From IMG/VR virus record IMGVR_UViG_3300042308_001511, positions 280,084 to 344,083 of that record: a stretch of 64,000 bases of DNA; one strand, given 5' to 3'. Position 1 is the first letter of the stretch; the number at the start of each line of letters is the position of its first letter. The notes below the pieces were generated by a model, which saw only the letters and a list, made by a program, of their open reading frames with translations, was not told the DNA's origin and searched no databases. This document shows, piece by piece, positions 15,441 to 60,817 of the stretch. A program made the translations under genes and the position numbers.

Positions 15441-15728
15441 TCAGTATTCCGCTCCGGAATTTTCCAATACATAATCGAACCAGTCTTCTGGCATGTCGTC
15501 GCAGTTTCCAGCGATTGCATCTGCTAGTACTTTGTTTCTATCTGAATACCCTTCGGCATCAATCACTTCTTTTATGATTGCTGCGGCGTCTTCTTTGGAT
15601 AGTGTCTTTACGAAGTCGGTGATGGGTGTGATGTTCATTACTTCGTAGGGTCCTTTGTCGTCAAAGGAATATGTACCGAATCGGGTTAAGGCTTCGGTTA
15701 GTTTTTGTAAGATGTTTTCTGCGGTCAT
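15441..15728 (-). CDS. acidic hypothetical protein
   Basis: Start at MTAENIL; the longer ORF would overlap the tRNA-like RNA. Confidence 0.7.
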   Translation of the reverse strand: MTAENILQKLTEALTRFGTYSFDDKGPYEVMNITPITDFVKTLSKEDAAAIIKEVIDAEGYSDRNKVLADAIAGNCDDMPEDWFDYVLENSGAEY

Positions 15729-15756
15729 GTTTAGAGTTTTTATTTTAAAATTTTTA

Positions 15757-15873
15757 GAGTCAGGACAAGATTCGAACTTGTTATAAGAGAGGTCACTTAC
15801 CGCTGATGGGACTTTCACCATCACCCTCTGTATTGCCATACCACGTTGCGTCTACCAATTCCGCCACCTGACT
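15757..15873 (-). ncRNA. tRNA-like RNA with atypical central domain
   Basis: 7-bp acceptor AGTCAGG/CCTGACT; D arm GCG-GAATTGGTAGA-CGC; T arm ACAAG-TTCGAAT-CTTGT; about 66-nt centre with hairpins but no 5-bp/7-nt anticodon arm. Confidence 0.75.
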
Positions 15874-15876
15874 ATT

Positions 15877-15884
15877 CAAAGATA
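15877..15884 (-). promoter_or_regulatory. -7 box TATCTTTG directly upstream of tRNA-like RNA
   Basis: Exact TAnnTTTG 3 nt before the acceptor stem. Confidence 0.7.
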
Positions 15885-15894
15885 AGAATTATCC

Positions 15895-16578
15895 CTAATA
15901 AAATCTAAGTAAGATTGTTTTTTCTCCAGAGCGTGCAAATATAAAATCTTTGTATAATATCTCACTATTCGAGAATATACCGTAAATGTAATCCTCCTCA
16001 AAGTCTGCCTCGTAAATCTCTTCAGTGGTCATAACCCTTCTACCCCTCTTACCAAATATGAAATTAGAGTCCTCTATAAGAACCATTTGATTCTCGTTTA
16101 CGTGATCCATCACATAGTCACCATCATCATCACGTGTTGTCTGTTTATTTGACTGTCCCAAAAAGTCACTAAGATCAAACTCTATTGCTAATGAGTTCCT
16201 ACATTCATAGATATTGTACAACTCTTTGTATCCATACTCCTTAACGGTATCTGCAGGGTCATATACAATAAACTTTCCACCTACCGTTTTTAGTACCACC
16301 CAATGTTTTATGTTACCGTAGTAAACTGCAAGCATCCAAACTTTGTCGGGGTTTTGTAAGAAATAATTGAGAGGAGTTTCCGCCATAACCCGGTGCTTTA
16401 TACCGAGTTTATTTATTATGTCATGCATTCTTGGCCAAGGTGTGCCACCGATTCTGGTAGGAGACATATCGAATATATCTTGTATACCCAGTTCTTCTCG
16501 GTAACCAACAGCACTCATAATCATTCTGAGAGACGTTGGTCCACAAGATGATCCACAATTTTGGTTAAGGTGTTTCAT
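15895..16578 (-). CDS. C39-like cysteine peptidase
   Basis: Q...SCGPTSLRMI, HWVVL, IVYDPA catalytic motifs. Confidence 0.8.
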   Translation of the reverse strand: MKHLNQNCGSSCGPTSLRMIMSAVGYREELGIQDIFDMSPTRIGGTPWPRMHDIINKLGIKHRVMAETPLNYFLQNPDKVWMLAVYYGNIKHWVVLKTVGGKFIVYDPADTVKEYGYKELYNIYECRNSLAIEFDLSDFLGQSNKQTTRDDDGDYVMDHVNENQMVLIEDSNFIFGKRGRRVMTTEEIYEADFEEDYIYGIFSNSEILYKDFIFARSGEKTILLRFY

Positions 16579-35740: not shown

Positions 35741-36286
35741 CTATAAACCGAGCTCTTCTATACGTTTGTTCCTTGTGTAGGATCTCATAAGTGGCTGTGG
35801 ATCCATACTGAACATATACTCGCCGAGGTCGTCGGGTATCAGGCAGTCGTATTCCTTCTCGATGTTCATTATGACCTCTACCATATCTAAGTCGTCAACG
35901 TTCATCTCGTTGAACGTCTTGGCGCTGTAGTTCCATTCGAAATCGTAGTCTAGGTGTTCGCGTATCATGTCGTTGAAGGTCTTCGGAAACAGCAACGTAA
36001 CTAATTGTTCTATCGTCTTTATCGTCATTTTTTCCAGTATTTCGTTTATTCTTTTCTCCCTGTGCATCGACTTGTTCCGCGCTTCGTCTGGAATGAAGTC
36101 TTTCGTCCAGTAGCTCGCTACCCTTCCTACTCTTTGTGAGTTTGTCCAGTGCTTAGGTTTTTTCGGATAGCTTATTACCCTTCCTTGGAATGTTCCATCT
36201 GGATCCGCGGTATTGCAGCTTGTTGAAATTACCTCCACGACGAACTCTGGTTCTACTTTGGCAATCCATCTCTCTCCTGTTTTCAT
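35741..36286 (-). CDS. apparent fusion: SH3-like module plus ACP-like domain lacking the Ser, two tags
   Basis: Internal REKRINEILE; C-half MNVDDLDMVEVIMNIEKEYDCLIPDD matches ACP helix II; ends RNKRIEELGL. Confidence 0.75.
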   Translation of the reverse strand: MKTGERWIAKVEPEFVVEVISTSCNTADPDGTFQGRVISYPKKPKHWTNSQRVGRVASYWTKDFIPDEARNKSMHREKRINEILEKMTIKTIEQLVTLLFPKTFNDMIREHLDYDFEWNYSAKTFNEMNVDDLDMVEVIMNIEKEYDCLIPDDLGEYMFSMDPQPLMRSYTRNKRIEELGL

Positions 36287-36420
36287 ATCCCTATACCGTT
36301 TAGTGTTACATGGTTGTACGTTCACGTGATTATCTTCTCAATAGAATAATTATCACGATGATTATTAATAATGTCATAATTTTATTTTTTTTTATGTCTT
36401 ACGAATATAGCAAAAATAAA

Positions 36421-56238: not shown

Positions 56239-57105
56239 ATGCGAGTTATATGTGTAAAAATAGGGTCTCTTTCTGAGTTTGAGACGTTCCTTCTTGCCGA
56301 AAATTTGGGATTGGATTACTTATCTATGAATGAGATAAGAAGAGATAAGACTGTTAGGAAATATTGGTTTGACCTGAATGGTGGAAGACTTTTGGCAGTA
56401 GAAAGGGTTATACTGGGTGAAAAAGAGTTTGACCCTATGATGCCTTTAGATTCATTACAATTAGATTCAATTCGTAAAAGTAAGCCTGTTCAGGCAGGTG
56501 AACCAACTAGGAAGTTTAAAGGTGACATAGAAGAGAAGAGGAAAGATTTTCAGCGATTGTTGGAAGAGGAAAGGAAATACAAAGAGGATATGTTGAACCG
56601 TAAGGACTATAATCCTGGTAACATAGTTTGTATAAATTCTAAATCTACATTGGATCAGGTTTTCGCGGTTTGTGTTGTAAATGATGTGGATCCAGTTACG
56701 ACAATTTCTTTTATATACGGTAATAGTCACTTAGATATGACACGTGTTTGGTTTGAAAAAATAACCGGTGTTTTGGTTGCATATAGTTACTACGAATATG
56801 GTAGAGATAACTTTGTTATGGTTGATTGTTTGATACCTAAAAAAGCGATATATCAGATGAGTCACACTCCTGTTAATGTACCGAAATTGAAGGTTTCTGA
56901 TGTTGCAATAGATGCGTATGGTAAGTTGAAAGAGTTAGGAATAGACTTAGGTATACAAAAGTTAGAGAACGTCGTTCTGGTTCAAAAGAACAGAGAGTTT
57001 TTGGAAAAATTACAGAGTGAACTTGCAGATGCAATCGATACTGAAGATTATGAGAAGGCTGCAGTTCTTAGAGATAGAATAAATGCACTAAAGGATAGAG
57101 ATTAA
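56239..57105 (+). CDS. protein with C-terminal UVR (UvrB/UvrC) motif
   Basis: LEKLQSELADAIDTEDYEKAAVLRDRINAL. Confidence 0.75.
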   Translation: MRVICVKIGSLSEFETFLLAENLGLDYLSMNEIRRDKTVRKYWFDLNGGRLLAVERVILGEKEFDPMMPLDSLQLDSIRKSKPVQAGEPTRKFKGDIEEKRKDFQRLLEEERKYKEDMLNRKDYNPGNIVCINSKSTLDQVFAVCVVNDVDPVTTISFIYGNSHLDMTRVWFEKITGVLVAYSYYEYGRDNFVMVDCLIPKKAIYQMSHTPVNVPKLKVSDVAIDAYGKLKELGIDLGIQKLENVVLVQKNREFLEKLQSELADAIDTEDYEKAAVLRDRINALKDRD

Positions 57106-57404
57106 ATTCCTAAATCTCTTAGTTTTTTTTCTCTCTTCATTGCTGATATAAGTGAATTTGGTTGTATACTGAGTACCTTATCTACTACGAAATCAGAGAT
57201 TGTTAATTTATATTTCGTCTCTACTTCAATAATAGCGCCTATTACATCCAGTTCATCCATATCCATATCGTAGAAAGTATTTGCGTTCGGATCCCACTTT
57301 ATACTACAAAGGTTCTCACATATTTCGTCAAATGGTATTTGCATATCACATATAACAGATATAAGAGTTTCTAAGTTTGTAATAAGTTTCTTTGAGTCCA
57401 TCAC
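57102..57404 (-). CDS. acyl-carrier-protein-like, Ser replaced by Glu, with C-tag
   Basis: DMDMDELDVIGAIIEVETKYKLTISD aligns to ACP DSLDxVELxMxxEExFxxxIxD; ends REKKLRDLGI. Confidence 0.65.
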   Translation of the reverse strand: MMDSKKLITNLETLISVICDMQIPFDEICENLCSIKWDPNANTFYDMDMDELDVIGAIIEVETKYKLTISDFVVDKVLSIQPNSLISAMKREKKLRDLGI

Positions 57405-58197: not shown

Positions 58198-58743
58198 TTA
58201 GATACCAAGTTCGTTTATCTTTTTATCTCGTCTGGTCTCTGTGTCGAGGAAGCCGTCCCACTTCTTCATCTTTGCAATCAGTTCGTCCTGTTTCTCGCGT
58301 TCGTGTTTTTCGTTGAGTACGCTTTTGTACTCACGATCTAACATTTCCTTTATGGTATTGGGTACGTCGTAGTTGTCTAATGAAATCTCACCGATTTCGA
58401 GGCAATGAAAAAATCCTTGTTTGTAGACGAATATTTTATTAGCAGAGCGAAATATGTAAAGGTCGAACCAGCCGAGTTTCGAGTGGTAAGTCTTCTTTCT
58501 CTGTCGTGTAAACATCCACCAGAACATAGGAAATATCTTTCCGGTGTATTTTCCTTCTTCGACCATCTTTTCAAACAGAAAGAAAATTGCGGTCTGAACA
58601 ACAATTGTCACTAAGATTATAAGTACTAGAGCTATATTTCCGAGTATTCCTTCGAAATTAGATTTGTGTAAAATGGTTATTGGTATTATTGCGTTCGCCA
58701 AAATACCTAATAATATGTAAACTATCTTCTTAATTATCTCCAT
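58198..58743 (-). CDS. membrane protein with C-tag, paralog of 13367..13921
   Basis: TM helices; ends RDKKINELGI. Confidence 0.85.
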   Translation of the reverse strand: MEIIKKIVYILLGILANAIIPITILHKSNFEGILGNIALVLIILVTIVVQTAIFFLFEKMVEEGKYTGKIFPMFWWMFTRQRKKTYHSKLGWFDLYIFRSANKIFVYKQGFFHCLEIGEISLDNYDVPNTIKEMLDREYKSVLNEKHEREKQDELIAKMKKWDGFLDTETRRDKKINELGI

Positions 58744-59086: not shown

Positions 59087-60817
59087 TTAGAGTTGAGTTA
59101 CATTGAATCCGTATAGAGACCATCCCTTGCTTATAAGGTTCGTTAATGCAGTGTCACTTGCATGAGTTCTCAAAAGGTCATTTGTACTGTATTTAGTTCT
59201 AGTAAGTGAGCCGTTTACAACACCACTTGCGTCTAATCCTGTCAATAATGAATCGACTTCTGTAGGAGTTACTGAAGTTAGTCTATAAATATCTACGTCT
59301 TTAGCACTATAAGGTAGATTAAACGAAGTTATATCTAATTGTTTCAATTCTATAGTAAAAAGCTCTCCAAATGAAGCTAAGTCAATGTATGGCCAATTTA
59401 TATTCACTAAGTAAAGTCTTTCGAGTGAGTTCCATAGGTTAGTATTGCTATGGAATGTTGATATTGTTGTATCGAATATTGATGGGGTTATATCAAGTTG
59501 TGACATATCCTTCAGACTTAAATCTGTTAGTGATGTTAGATTTAAAAGATTAATCGCAGATACACCAACATTTTCAAGAAACAATCGTTTTAGGTTGTTT
59601 GGTAATTGCATAATACTTGAAGAATAATTGGGTGAATCCAATATAATAATTGTATCCAAATAAGGAAGTTGTAAATCGGTACTAACTAATGCTGCATTAT
59701 TTCTCAAATCGATATTGTCTAAGTTTTCACAACCAGTACTATTTATATTAGTCAAATTTGTACAATTGCTTAATTGTAACATTGTTACACCATCGTGGCC
59801 ACCTAAGTCTAAAGATGTAATAGGTAAGTTTGTGATATTCAGTAATTTAGTTACATAATGTGGAGAGTTCCATTCTGACCTGTTGCTTGTTATAGTTCCA
59901 TCTAATTTTATGAAAGATGGTTGTTGCCAATTAGGTATATTAGTCAATGACATTACTCCTGTGAACGATTGTAGGTTCTCAAGTGTTATATGCTCAATGT
60001 TAGTTAATAATGAGAAATTTAAATCAGAAGTTGTAATTACTGTATTGTTTTTTATTGTAAGGTATTTCAATTGAGTTACCTTATCTAGTGAGAATTCTAA
60101 GTATTTGTTGTTGGTTAGTTCTATACTAGATATATATCCTGGCATCATTCCAGTATTAACGTTTCCATTAACGTCACAGCTCCATATTTTTATCAATTTT
60201 GGTCCATATGAATTCATAGTTCCATCAGGAACCGACGTATTTGTCTTTTGGAAGGTTGTCCATGATGGTAGTATTTCTGAAGTTCCGTCCCAATATAATA
60301 TACGATAATATCCTTCTGATGATCCGATTCTACCATCTATTATATCGCCAGTTAAAAGTTGTGCTTTCAGGATAAATGCATTTGGTGGTGCAACCAATTG
60401 TTGTTCAACAACTCTACGTAGTGTACATGATTTACCACCTACTTGTATTGCAAAACTTGCAGTTCCTGATGTTGATGGAGTTCCTGATATTGTATATGTT
60501 AATGTACCACTACTTAGTAAAAAGAAACCTGATTGTAGTTTTGCATTAAGACCAGTAACACCAGTTGAATTTACCGTTTGTGTTGGGTATGAACCTCCAT
60601 TACCACCAGCATATGAAACCGATGATGATGCACTTACCGGTTTAAGTGCTACTAATGTACCGTAGTTGGTAAAAGATCCACAATTTAGAGATTGTATAGT
60701 TCCGTCCCAGTCATCTACAATAGATGTTCTAGGCCAATTGTTTGGATTTTTGTATGGTTTGATACCTGCAATGAGATTTCCCCACATATTGTACCATTTA
60801 CTTCTGTCGATAGGCAT
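59087..60817 (-). CDS. LRR protein with Ig-like N-terminal module; related to 27086..28258
   Basis: Degenerate LRRs; shares [AS]CDVNGN and C-cap (LD..G...RT..S.....NL..K.W...G) with 27086 protein. Confidence 0.8.
   Translation of the reverse strand: MPIDRSKWYNMWGNLIAGIKPYKNPNNWPRTSIVDDWDGTIQSLNCGSFTNYGTLVALKPVSASSSVSYAGGNGGSYPTQTVNSTGVTGLNAKLQSGFFLLSSGTLTYTISGTPSTSGTASFAIQVGGKSCTLRRVVEQQLVAPPNAFILKAQLLTGDIIDGRIGSSEGYYRILYWDGTSEILPSWTTFQKTNTSVPDGTMNSYGPKLIKIWSCDVNGNVNTGMMPGYISSIELTNNKYLEFSLDKVTQLKYLTIKNNTVITTSDLNFSLLTNIEHITLENLQSFTGVMSLTNIPNWQQPSFIKLDGTITSNRSEWNSPHYVTKLLNITNLPITSLDLGGHDGVTMLQLSNCTNLTNINSTGCENLDNIDLRNNAALVSTDLQLPYLDTIIILDSPNYSSSIMQLPNNLKRLFLENVGVSAINLLNLTSLTDLSLKDMSQLDITPSIFDTTISTFHSNTNLWNSLERLYLVNINWPYIDLASFGELFTIELKQLDITSFNLPYSAKDVDIYRLTSVTPTEVDSLLTGLDASGVVNGSLTRTKYSTNDLLRTHASDTALTNLISKGWSLYGFNVTQL

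What the first reader, a model, noticed from the sequence alone, without database searches (positions are those of the whole stretch)
57102..57404. Acyl-carrier-protein mimic with the phosphopantetheinylated Ser replaced by Glu
Seen: ...FYDMDMDELDVIGAIIEVETKYKLTISD... Established: ACP has G[AL]DSLDxVELxMxxEExFxxxIxD, with 4'-phosphopantetheine attached to the Ser of DSL. Here DSL reads DEL, so it cannot be loaded, and the acidic residue could imitate the phosphate. Inference: a decoy that binds ACP partners (AcpS, Fab enzymes, LpxA/D, SpoT, or ACP-dependent toxins) to redirect lipid synthesis or block a defence. It also carries the C-tag.
Basis: partly seen in the sequence, partly recalled or inferred. 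Interest (0 to 1): 0.75.

Follow-up and report, generated by a model that had tools for sequence, protein, structure and literature searches.

The report
Serine-less acyl carrier protein look-alike
A 344-kb freshwater phage encodes a small protein with the fold and docking helix of the bacterial acyl carrier protein but no cofactor-attachment serine; this holds across a whole phage family, so it probably binds proteins rather than carrying lipids.

Summary
The ORF at 57102-57404 (-) encodes 99 aa from the ATG at 57401. It is a true ACP homologue: a family profile matches 108 solved ACPs (best E 7e-11), and the AF2 model (pLDDT 90) superposes on ACPs only.

Glu50 sits at the first turn of helix II, where ACP has the phosphopantetheinylated Ser. 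This is not a one-off mutation. Among 78 relatives, Ser occurs 0 times (D 37, E 30, others 11). The rest of the helix-II signature is kept, and dN/dS is 0.10-0.25.

All relatives also end in the decapeptide R-[EDN]-x-[KR]-[LI]-x-x-[LI]-G-[IL]. In this phage that tag closes 57 ORFs from 45 unrelated families.

The phage has no canonical ACP, PPTase or ACP-using enzyme of the families searched. The same genome carries a second Ser-less, tagged paralogue.

That the protein cannot be loaded is well supported. That it acts as a decoy for host ACP partners is plausible, since apo-ACP is a known growth inhibitor, but it is untested. The tag's role is unknown. A phage-encoded ClpC/E-like ATPase plus ClpP protease is one lead.

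I class it as a new variant of a known kind.

The parts
57102..57404 (-). ORF of the Ser-less ACP homologue (stop 57102-57104). The likely true start is ATG 57399-57401, giving 99 aa.
   Evidence: dN/dS 0.10-0.25 against three orthologues
57246..57257 (-). D49-E50-L51-D52, the counterpart of the ACP D-S-L-D motif. The E50 codon GAA is at 57252-57254.
   Evidence: HMMER alignments to solved ACPs; column counts D57/62, D29+E24/62, L54/62, D60/62
57213..57254 (-). Helix II (residues 50-63), the counterpart of the ACP recognition helix. E61 is invariant in the family.
   Evidence: AF2 secondary structure H50-63; conservation
57135..57374 (-). ACP-like helical core (residues about 10-89): helices 10-19/24-32, 50-63, 70-78 and 81-89, plus a small strand pair 5-7/66-68.
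   Evidence: AF2 pLDDT 90.4; Foldseek top 50 all ACPs, TM by target 0.6-0.69, rmsd 2.6-3.4 A; VIA Z 5.3-6.6
57105..57134 (-). C-terminal decapeptide tag R90-E-K-K-L-R-D-L-G-I99. It continues helix IV.
   Evidence: Tag census; R90 invariant and G98 51/62 in the family; model helix 81-96
35741..36325 (-). Paralogue. The C-terminal half (35744-36034) is a second Ser-less, tagged ACP-like domain (..VDDLD.., ends RNKRIEELGL). It is fused to a 97-aa N-terminal part that ends in an internal tag-like REKRINEILE.
   Evidence: core profile E 2.9e-30; stand-alone 95-aa orthologues on contigs L018 and L026
57410..57712 (-). Upstream neighbour, 100 aa, ending in the variant tag RESILGEILK. It is syntenic in close relatives only.

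Best explanation
Shown. This gene encodes a member of a large, so far unnamed family of phage proteins descended from type II fatty-acid-synthase ACP. They keep the four-helix fold, the acidic character (pI about 4.4) and nearly the whole helix-II recognition signature. They have lost the phosphopantetheine-attachment Ser and gained a C-terminal decapeptide shared with dozens of unrelated small proteins of the same phage. The protein therefore cannot act as an acyl carrier.

Inferred. It works as a permanently unloaded ACP surrogate. It uses the conserved helix-II face to dock onto a protein that normally receives ACP. That partner is most likely a low-abundance host enzyme of lipid or lipid A synthesis, or the host PPTase. 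Docking would block or re-route that enzyme, as over-produced apo-ACP does in E. coli. The complete absence of Ser, with Asp/Glu preferred, is read as selection against being loaded by the host PPTase, perhaps with a charge contribution. The C-terminal tag is a separate addressing or turnover module common to this phage's small, presumably early, proteins. It is not part of the ACP mimicry.
For: Homology and fold: profile against PDB gave 108 ACP chains, best E 6.7e-11, with FAS AcpPs ranked first. AF2 gave pLDDT 90.4. The Foldseek top 50 were all ACPs and VIA Z reached 6.6.

Family trait: 102 relatives among 1.84 billion representatives. The 78 tagged single-domain members have D37/E30/T4/A2/G2/H1/N1/Y1 and no Ser. 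Untagged or multidomain hits have Ser in 31 of 50.

Recognition-helix residues are kept: D49 57/62, L51 54/62, D52 60/62, E55 49/62, M58 47/62, E61 62/62, I68 56/62, D70 61/62. The core net charge has median -10.

Purifying selection: dN/dS 0.10-0.25.

No phage partner of the expected kinds: no PF00550 hit above cut-off, no PPTase, no AMP-binding, ketosynthase or PlsC-type acyltransferase. No conserved enzyme neighbour.

Precedent: apo-ACP is a stronger growth inhibitor than holo-ACP, through glycerol-3-phosphate acyltransferase (PMC3896788 citing Keating 1995). Many solved complexes use ACP as a docking subunit (target lists).
Against: No binding partner has been identified, and the AcpS complex prediction gave no verdict. 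Identity to cellular ACPs is only about 20%, so this is an old, phage-internal lineage rather than a recent copy of the host ACP. The conserved residues are also those needed simply to keep the ACP fold. 14% of members carry a non-acidic residue at the Ser site, so charge mimicry is not obligatory. Host ACP is very abundant, so competing with it requires high expression or a rare target. The protein shares its tag and gene neighbourhood with at least 45 unrelated families, so its role may be defined by that system. No RNA run was listed, so expression time is unknown.
Confidence: 0.4

Rival explanations
1. Tag-defined cargo or adaptor. The ACP-like bundle is just one of many small stable domains that the phage addresses with the C-terminal decapeptide. 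The address could be its own ClpC/E-ClpP protease as a built-in degron or timer, its Hsp70, or the capsid as a loaded or ejected protein. Its real partner has nothing to do with ACP biology.
For: 57 ORFs in 45 BLAST families carry the tag, and only two are ACP-like. The tag is conserved at protein level with varied codons. It is present in distant huge phages. Tag and Ser loss co-occur perfectly. The phage encodes a Clp ATPase with a VGF ClpP-docking loop, a bona fide ClpP and a second ClpP-like protein, and an Hsp70.
Against: This does not explain why the helix-II signature is kept so strictly while only Ser is lost. It does not explain why phages keep two such paralogues. No receptor for the tag has been shown. 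At least one tagged protein is a membrane protein (58198-58743), which fits poorly with capsid loading.
Confidence: 0.3
2. Non-inhibitory structural or regulatory subunit of a phage, or phage-host, complex. This would resemble ACP as a fixed subunit of respiratory complex I, NFS1-ISD11, MukBEF, MmpL5 or EmbAB. The fold is used as a clip and no carrier chemistry is needed.
For: Solved structures matching the model include many such complexes. The family is old, diversified and under purifying selection. Two paralogues per genome would fit two distinct partner complexes.
Against: In several of those known complexes the acyl-phosphopantetheine arm is part of the interface (my knowledge, not tested here), and this protein cannot have that arm. 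No conserved neighbour gene points to a partner.
Confidence: 0.15
3. Still a carrier protein, loaded at another residue or by an unknown chemistry on Asp/Glu.
For: Close homologues conserve three Cys (C18, C28, C32).
Against: Those Cys are not conserved across the family. No PPTase or loading enzyme of the families searched is in the phage. The site itself varies among D/E/T/A/G/H/N/Y.
Confidence: 0.03
4. A decaying or accidentally mutated ACP gene (a one-off Ser-to-Glu change), or a chance ORF.
For: Pfam does not reach its threshold.
Against: 78 relatives have the same loss. dN/dS is 0.10-0.25. The AF2 model is confident. The stretch is held by lake and river metagenome runs of at least 12 studies.
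Confidence: 0.01

Closest known systems
Bacterial type II FAS acyl carrier protein (AcpP; Pfam PP-binding PF00550)
   Same: Four-helix fold, acidic pI, and the D-x-L-D / E41 / M44 / E47 / I54 / D56 signature of helix II and the following loop. The best profile matches are E. coli and H. pylori AcpP.
   Different: Asp/Glu (rarely other residues) replaces the phosphopantetheinylated Ser in every member. Identity is about 20%. There is an extra N-terminal strand and a C-terminal helical decapeptide. The protein scores below Pfam thresholds.
Phage 'acyl carrier proteins' (PHROG 5934 / 4154; e.g. the BFVD entries of Salmonella phage ViI and Achromobacter phage Motura)
   Same: The protein matches phrog_5934 at E 1.9e-6 and has weak fold matches to phage carrier proteins. 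JGI names several family members 'acyl carrier protein'.
   Different: tblastn of three family members found no relative in 50,697 phage records, apart from one weak hit in the uncultured 634-kb record LR745206.1. I could not inspect whether PHROG 5934 members keep Ser. The C-tag was seen only in the huge-phage contigs.
Apo-ACP as growth inhibitor in E. coli (Keating, Carey and Cronan 1995, as summarised in PMC3896788)
   Same: An ACP that is not loaded still binds partners and inhibits sn-glycerol-3-phosphate acyltransferase. This gives a direct mechanistic precedent for a non-loadable ACP acting as an inhibitor.
   Different: That case is an over-expression artefact of the cell's own ACP. 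Here the unloaded state is genetically fixed in a phage family. The target is unknown.
C-terminal peptide address tags (the ssrA degron read by Clp proteases; encapsulin cargo-loading peptides). This is an analogy from my own knowledge.
   Same: A short peptide of about 10 residues at the extreme C-terminus is shared by unrelated proteins. The phage encodes a Clp ATPase and ClpP.
   Different: The sequence is unrelated. It is genetically encoded on each gene and predicted to be helical. No reader protein has been identified, and no tmRNA gene is in the genome.

Membership tests
Acyl carrier protein / PP-binding superfamily | Four-helix ACP fold | tested here: met
   AF2 pLDDT 90.4. Foldseek top 50 all ACPs, TM by target up to 0.69. 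VIA Z 5.3-6.6 over 65-70 residues.
Acyl carrier protein / PP-binding superfamily | Significant sequence-profile similarity to ACPs | tested here: met
   The family profile matches 108 PDB ACP sequences, best E 6.7e-11. The single sequence is only marginal: Pfam PP-binding_2 14.4 bits < 32, and PDB best E 0.012.
Acyl carrier protein / PP-binding superfamily | Conserved Ser of the D-S-L motif that receives 4'-phosphopantetheine | tested here: not met
   Glu50 here. 0 Ser among 78 tagged relatives.
Acyl carrier protein / PP-binding superfamily | Works with a PPTase and ACP-dependent enzymes | tested here: not met
   No ACPS-family PPTase, AMP-binding, ketosynthase or PlsC acyltransferase in the 344-kb phage genome. 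Host enzymes were not testable.
Acyl carrier protein / PP-binding superfamily | Acidic helix-II recognition surface | tested here: met
   D49, D52, E55, E61 and D70 conserved at 79-100%. Median pI 4.4, core charge -10.
PHROG 5934 'acyl carrier protein' | HMM match | tested here: met
   E 1.9e-6, 28.9 bits, residues 16-82. The paralogue matches at 1.8e-7.
ACP decoy / inhibitor of ACP partners (functional class) | Physical binding to an ACP-partner protein | tested here: inconclusive
   The only test was a complex prediction with the E. coli AcpS trimer. The score of 0.29 was under the mark of 0.32, so no verdict. Needs pull-down.
C-tagged small proteins of this huge-phage group (no published name found) | C-terminal R(-10), [KR](-7), [LI](-6), [LI](-3), G(-2), [IL](-1) | tested here: met
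   REKKLRDLGI. The same pattern occurs in 48 strict and 57 relaxed ORFs of the genome against about 1.8 expected.

The most novel reading that the evidence does not exclude
A group of huge phages from lakes, rivers and other habitats marks about a tenth of its proteome with a private C-terminal decapeptide code, R-[EDN]-x-[KR]-[LI]-x-x-[LI]-G-[IL]. The marked proteins include two genetically 'locked-apo' ACP surrogates. The code is read by phage-encoded machinery, most attractively the phage's own ClpC/E-ClpP protease or Hsp70. The pseudo-ACPs are then timed inhibitors that shut down a host ACP-dependent step such as the PPTase, lipid A synthesis or phospholipid acyltransfer.
Probability: 0.12. 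Interest if true: 0.85.

Novelty: new variant of a known kind. Interest (0 to 1): 0.62.

Why it matters
ACP is the hub of bacterial lipid synthesis and one of the best-connected proteins in the cell. A widespread phage family that keeps the ACP docking face while never allowing the cofactor site would be a natural, evolution-optimised probe or inhibitor of ACP-partner interactions. It would also be a new class of phage host-takeover protein.

The family travels with a C-terminal decapeptide shared by dozens of unrelated small proteins. This points to an undescribed protein-addressing system in huge phages. The ACP look-alike has a recognisable fold and a predictable binding face, which makes it the most tractable entry point for studying that system.

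Tried and rejected
1. Complex prediction of the protein with an E. coli AcpS trimer gave no verdict (0.29 against a mark of 0.32). This is neither support nor evidence against. References ACPS_FLAJ1 and ACPS_BACTN were not held.

2. Related loci could not be found in IMG/VR. Alignment A3 was too diverse to seed a search, and A2 found none by tblastn.

3. megablast of 55-60 kb against phages found no match. tblastn of two further family members found no match.

4. Literature searches for Ser-less phage ACPs and for a shared C-terminal motif in huge or jumbo phages found nothing relevant.

5. The tag as a by-product of a DNA element or Shine-Dalgarno/stop-start overlap is rejected as the main cause. 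Five Arg codons and four Gly codons are used at the invariant positions. 16 of 57 tagged genes have no same-strand downstream gene. ATGA overlaps are nevertheless three times enriched (17/57 against 34/360).

6. The tag as a phage tmRNA-type tag: no tmRNA or tRNA gene in the genome.

7. Tail-specific protease (S41) as tag reader: none encoded.

8. All tagged proteins being hidden ACP relatives is rejected. A core profile without the tag finds only the two paralogues.

9. An RNA-seq run to show expression: none was listed.

10. The first AF2 model, from 13 sequences, was only moderate (pLDDT 79.5). It was superseded by the 62-sequence model.

Full report
**Setting.** The window is the last 64 kb (280,084-344,083) of a 344,083-bp virus record that CheckV rates 91% complete. 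GC is 36.6%, and code 11 gives about 94% coding. There are no tRNA or tmRNA genes.

The genome encodes a ribonucleotide reductase, a two-ring Clp ATPase, Hsp70, PEP carboxykinase and a type II topoisomerase subunit, plus a bona fide ClpP and a second ClpP-like protein. The Clp ATPase is 70-71% identical to genes in two uncultured phage assemblies of 634 and 642 kb.

The stretch around the finding is held by lake and river metagenome runs from at least 12 studies. It is therefore a real and recurrent freshwater phage. A T9SS sorting-domain gene on a related contig hints at a Bacteroidota host. This is only a hint.

**The observation.** The ORF at 57102-57404 (-) is as described. The GTG at 57404 is followed directly by ATG, and all homologues start MD.., so the product is probably 99 aa. 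Residue numbers below count from that Met.

Taken alone, the sequence is only marginally ACP-like:
- Pfam PP-binding_2 scores 14.4 bits against a cut-off of 32.
- PHROG 5934 'acyl carrier protein' matches at E 1.9e-6.
- All 38 PDB hits are carrier proteins, with a best E of 0.012.

**The family.** A word-indexed search found 12 homologues at 59-95% identity. A profile search of 1.84 billion representatives found 102 proteins at E <= 1e-3. A profile built from 62 of these matches 108 solved ACP sequences. The housekeeping FAS AcpPs of H. pylori and E. coli rank first at E about 1e-10. The family consensus ..mGlDdLDiiElimeiEk...isIsDe.. lies on ..lGaDSLDvvElimalEe...ieIpDe...

With that alignment AF2 gives pLDDT 90.4 and pTM 0.76. 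The helices are at 10-19/24-32, 50-63, 70-78 and 81-96. The 50 best Foldseek matches are all ACPs, with TM by target 0.6-0.69 and rmsd 2.6-3.4 A. VIA-align gives Z 5.3-6.6 over 65-70 residues. That Z is middling in absolute terms, but every match is a carrier protein and it agrees with the sequence statistics. Glu50 (GAA, 57252-57254) is the first residue of helix II, which is the place of the phosphopantetheinylated Ser.

**Is it a one-off?** No. I aligned every hit to the profile and split the hits by C-terminus.
- The 78 single-domain members that end in the tag have D 37, E 30, T 4, A 2, G 2, H 1, N 1, Y 1 and no Ser at this column.
- The untagged or multidomain hits, which are ordinary or tandem ACPs, have Ser in 31 of 50.

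The rest of the ACP signature is retained in the Ser-less family:
- D49 57/62
- L51 54/62
- D52 60/62
- E55 49/62
- M58 47/62
- E61 62/62
- I68 56/62
- D70 61/62

The proteins are as acidic as ACPs, with median pI 4.4 and a core net charge of -10. Orthologue pairs give dN/dS of 0.10-0.25.

Members with T, A, G or N are one nucleotide step from Ser, yet Ser never appears. Glu is a poor helix N-cap, yet it makes up 38%. I read this as selection against a loadable residue, with some preference for negative charge. This is inference.

The same genome holds a second copy in the C-terminal half of 35741-36325 (-). It is 29% identical, reads VDDLD, and is also tagged. Close relatives carry the same two paralogues as separate genes.

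**What the phage does not have.**
- No PP-binding match above threshold.
- No ACPS-type PPTase.
- No AMP-binding enzyme, ketosynthase or PlsC-type acyltransferase.

On six related contigs the neighbours are small ORFs of unknown function. Synteny holds only among close relatives, and no enzyme gene travels with the family. A partner of the ACP kind would therefore have to be a host protein, or else an unrecognised phage protein.

**The C-terminal tag.** The last ten residues, REKKLRDLGI, belong to a pattern that dominates this genome.
- 48 ORFs end in [ILMV]-G-[ILV], against about 1.8 expected. All 48 have Arg at -10.
- The consensus is R-[EDN]-x-[KR]-[LI]-x-[E..]-[LI]-G-[IL].
- The invariant Arg uses five codons and the invariant Gly four, so conservation is at the protein level.
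- With a slightly relaxed pattern 57 ORFs carry the tag. Without the tag they fall into 45 BLAST clusters, and only the two paralogues are ACP-like.
- Pfam and PHROGs are blank for almost all of them.
- 38 of the 57 lie in this window, in arrays of small minus-strand genes.

The tag is equally frequent on a distant 250-kb contig (12 in 20 kb) and on other related contigs. It also occurs in the 634-kb record LR745206.1. The ACP-like gene there reads MDDLD and ends ..RERILNEILKDVS.

In the model the tag prolongs helix IV. The L-x-x-L-G-I ending looks to me like a Gly-capped amphipathic helix, which would suit a docking motif.

Tagged genes show three times more ATGA stop/start overlaps than untagged small genes (17/57 against 34/360). 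This explains the ATA-TGA preference but not the tag, because 16 tagged genes have no downstream gene on the same strand.

No reader is identified. The phage's Clp ATPase has a VGF ClpP-docking loop, and ClpP genes are present. A built-in degron is therefore an attractive lead. Handover to a chaperone, or capsid loading, remains possible.

**Mechanism.**

Shown: a fold-competent, selected ACP homologue that lacks the attachment residue cannot carry acyl groups.

Inferred: it acts through protein binding by the conserved helix-II face. The best precedent is the cell's own apo-ACP. [quoted passage not shown] 1995).

Host ACP is very abundant, so a rare partner is a more reasonable target than the Fab enzymes as a whole. 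Candidates are the PPTase, an acyltransferase, or LpxA/D. This is my reasoning, not a result. My one complex prediction, with the E. coli AcpS trimer, stayed under the mark and counts for nothing either way.

The main rival is that the ACP bundle is only one of many cargo domains of the tag system. In that case its partner is unrelated to ACP biology. A third reading treats it as a fixed subunit of some complex, as ACP is in complex I, NFS1-ISD11, MukBEF or MmpL5. These structures are among those that matched the model.

**Comparison and novelty.** JGI pipelines already label several members 'acyl carrier protein', and PHROGs has phage ACP families. The protein is a homologue of ACP, but it fails the defining functional feature, the Ser. 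It should not be annotated as a carrier protein.

I found no paper describing Ser-less phage ACPs or the shared tag in the held library. No relative exists among 50,697 deposited phage records other than one uncultured huge phage.

I class the finding as a new variant of a known kind, a pseudo-ACP family. It has a more unusual companion feature, the proteome-wide C-terminal tag, which deserves its own study.

Noticed in passing
window 6445-58743 (38 ORFs) and G000 13911-271147 (19 ORFs): A C-terminal decapeptide, R-[EDN]-x-[KR]-[LI]-x-x-[LI]-G-[IL]-COOH, ends 57 ORFs from 45 unrelated BLAST families. R(-10) and G(-2) are invariant although their codons vary. The tag is also frequent on distant huge-phage contigs and in LR745206.1. 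Its function is unknown.
   Followed up: partly
window 35741-36325 (-): A 194-aa ORF looks like a fusion. A 97-aa part ends in an internal tag-like REKRINEILE and runs straight into the second Ser-less ACP-like domain, which has its own tag. Relatives have the ACP-like part as a separate 95-aa gene.
   Followed up: partly
G000 93802-95922 (+), 243344-244093 (-), 15462-16028 (+), 138004-139902 (-): The phage encodes a Clp protease set and an Hsp70. The ClpC/E-like two-ring ATPase lacks an N-domain and has a VGF ClpP-docking loop at aa 557-559. There is a bona fide ClpP and a second ClpP-like protein, possibly a prohead protease. The Hsp70 is full length. These are candidate readers of the tag.
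   Followed up: partly
whole genome G000: ARAGORN finds no tRNA or tmRNA gene in the 344-kb phage genome.
   Followed up: yes
window 56239-57105 (+) and 57102-57404 (-): The 288-aa gene with a C-terminal UvrB/UvrC (UVR) motif (E 8.7e-10) converges on the ACP-like gene, and the two stop codons overlap in a TTAA. In relatives a LOG/lysine-decarboxylase-like gene follows the ACP-like gene on the same strand instead.
   Followed up: no
tagged genes genome-wide: Tagged genes use TGA stops in 32 of 57 cases and overlap the next start by ATGA in 17 of 57. Untagged small genes do so in 97 of 360 and 34 of 360. The terminal Ile-ATA plus TGA creates the next ATG.
   Followed up: yes
P0013 (871-bp ENA contig): A 98-aa protein shares the first 60 residues of this ACP-like protein (93% identity) and then switches to an unrelated tail with a PF11307 match. 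This is either a recombinant or an assembly chimera.
   Followed up: no
window 59087-60817 (-): A 576-aa protein with a long run of leucine-rich-repeat-like units (..LxLxNLxxL..) lies next to the small-gene array.
   Followed up: no
window 58198-58743 (-): A tagged 181-aa protein has two predicted N-terminal transmembrane helices. The tag therefore also occurs on membrane proteins, which constrains ideas about its reader.
   Followed up: no
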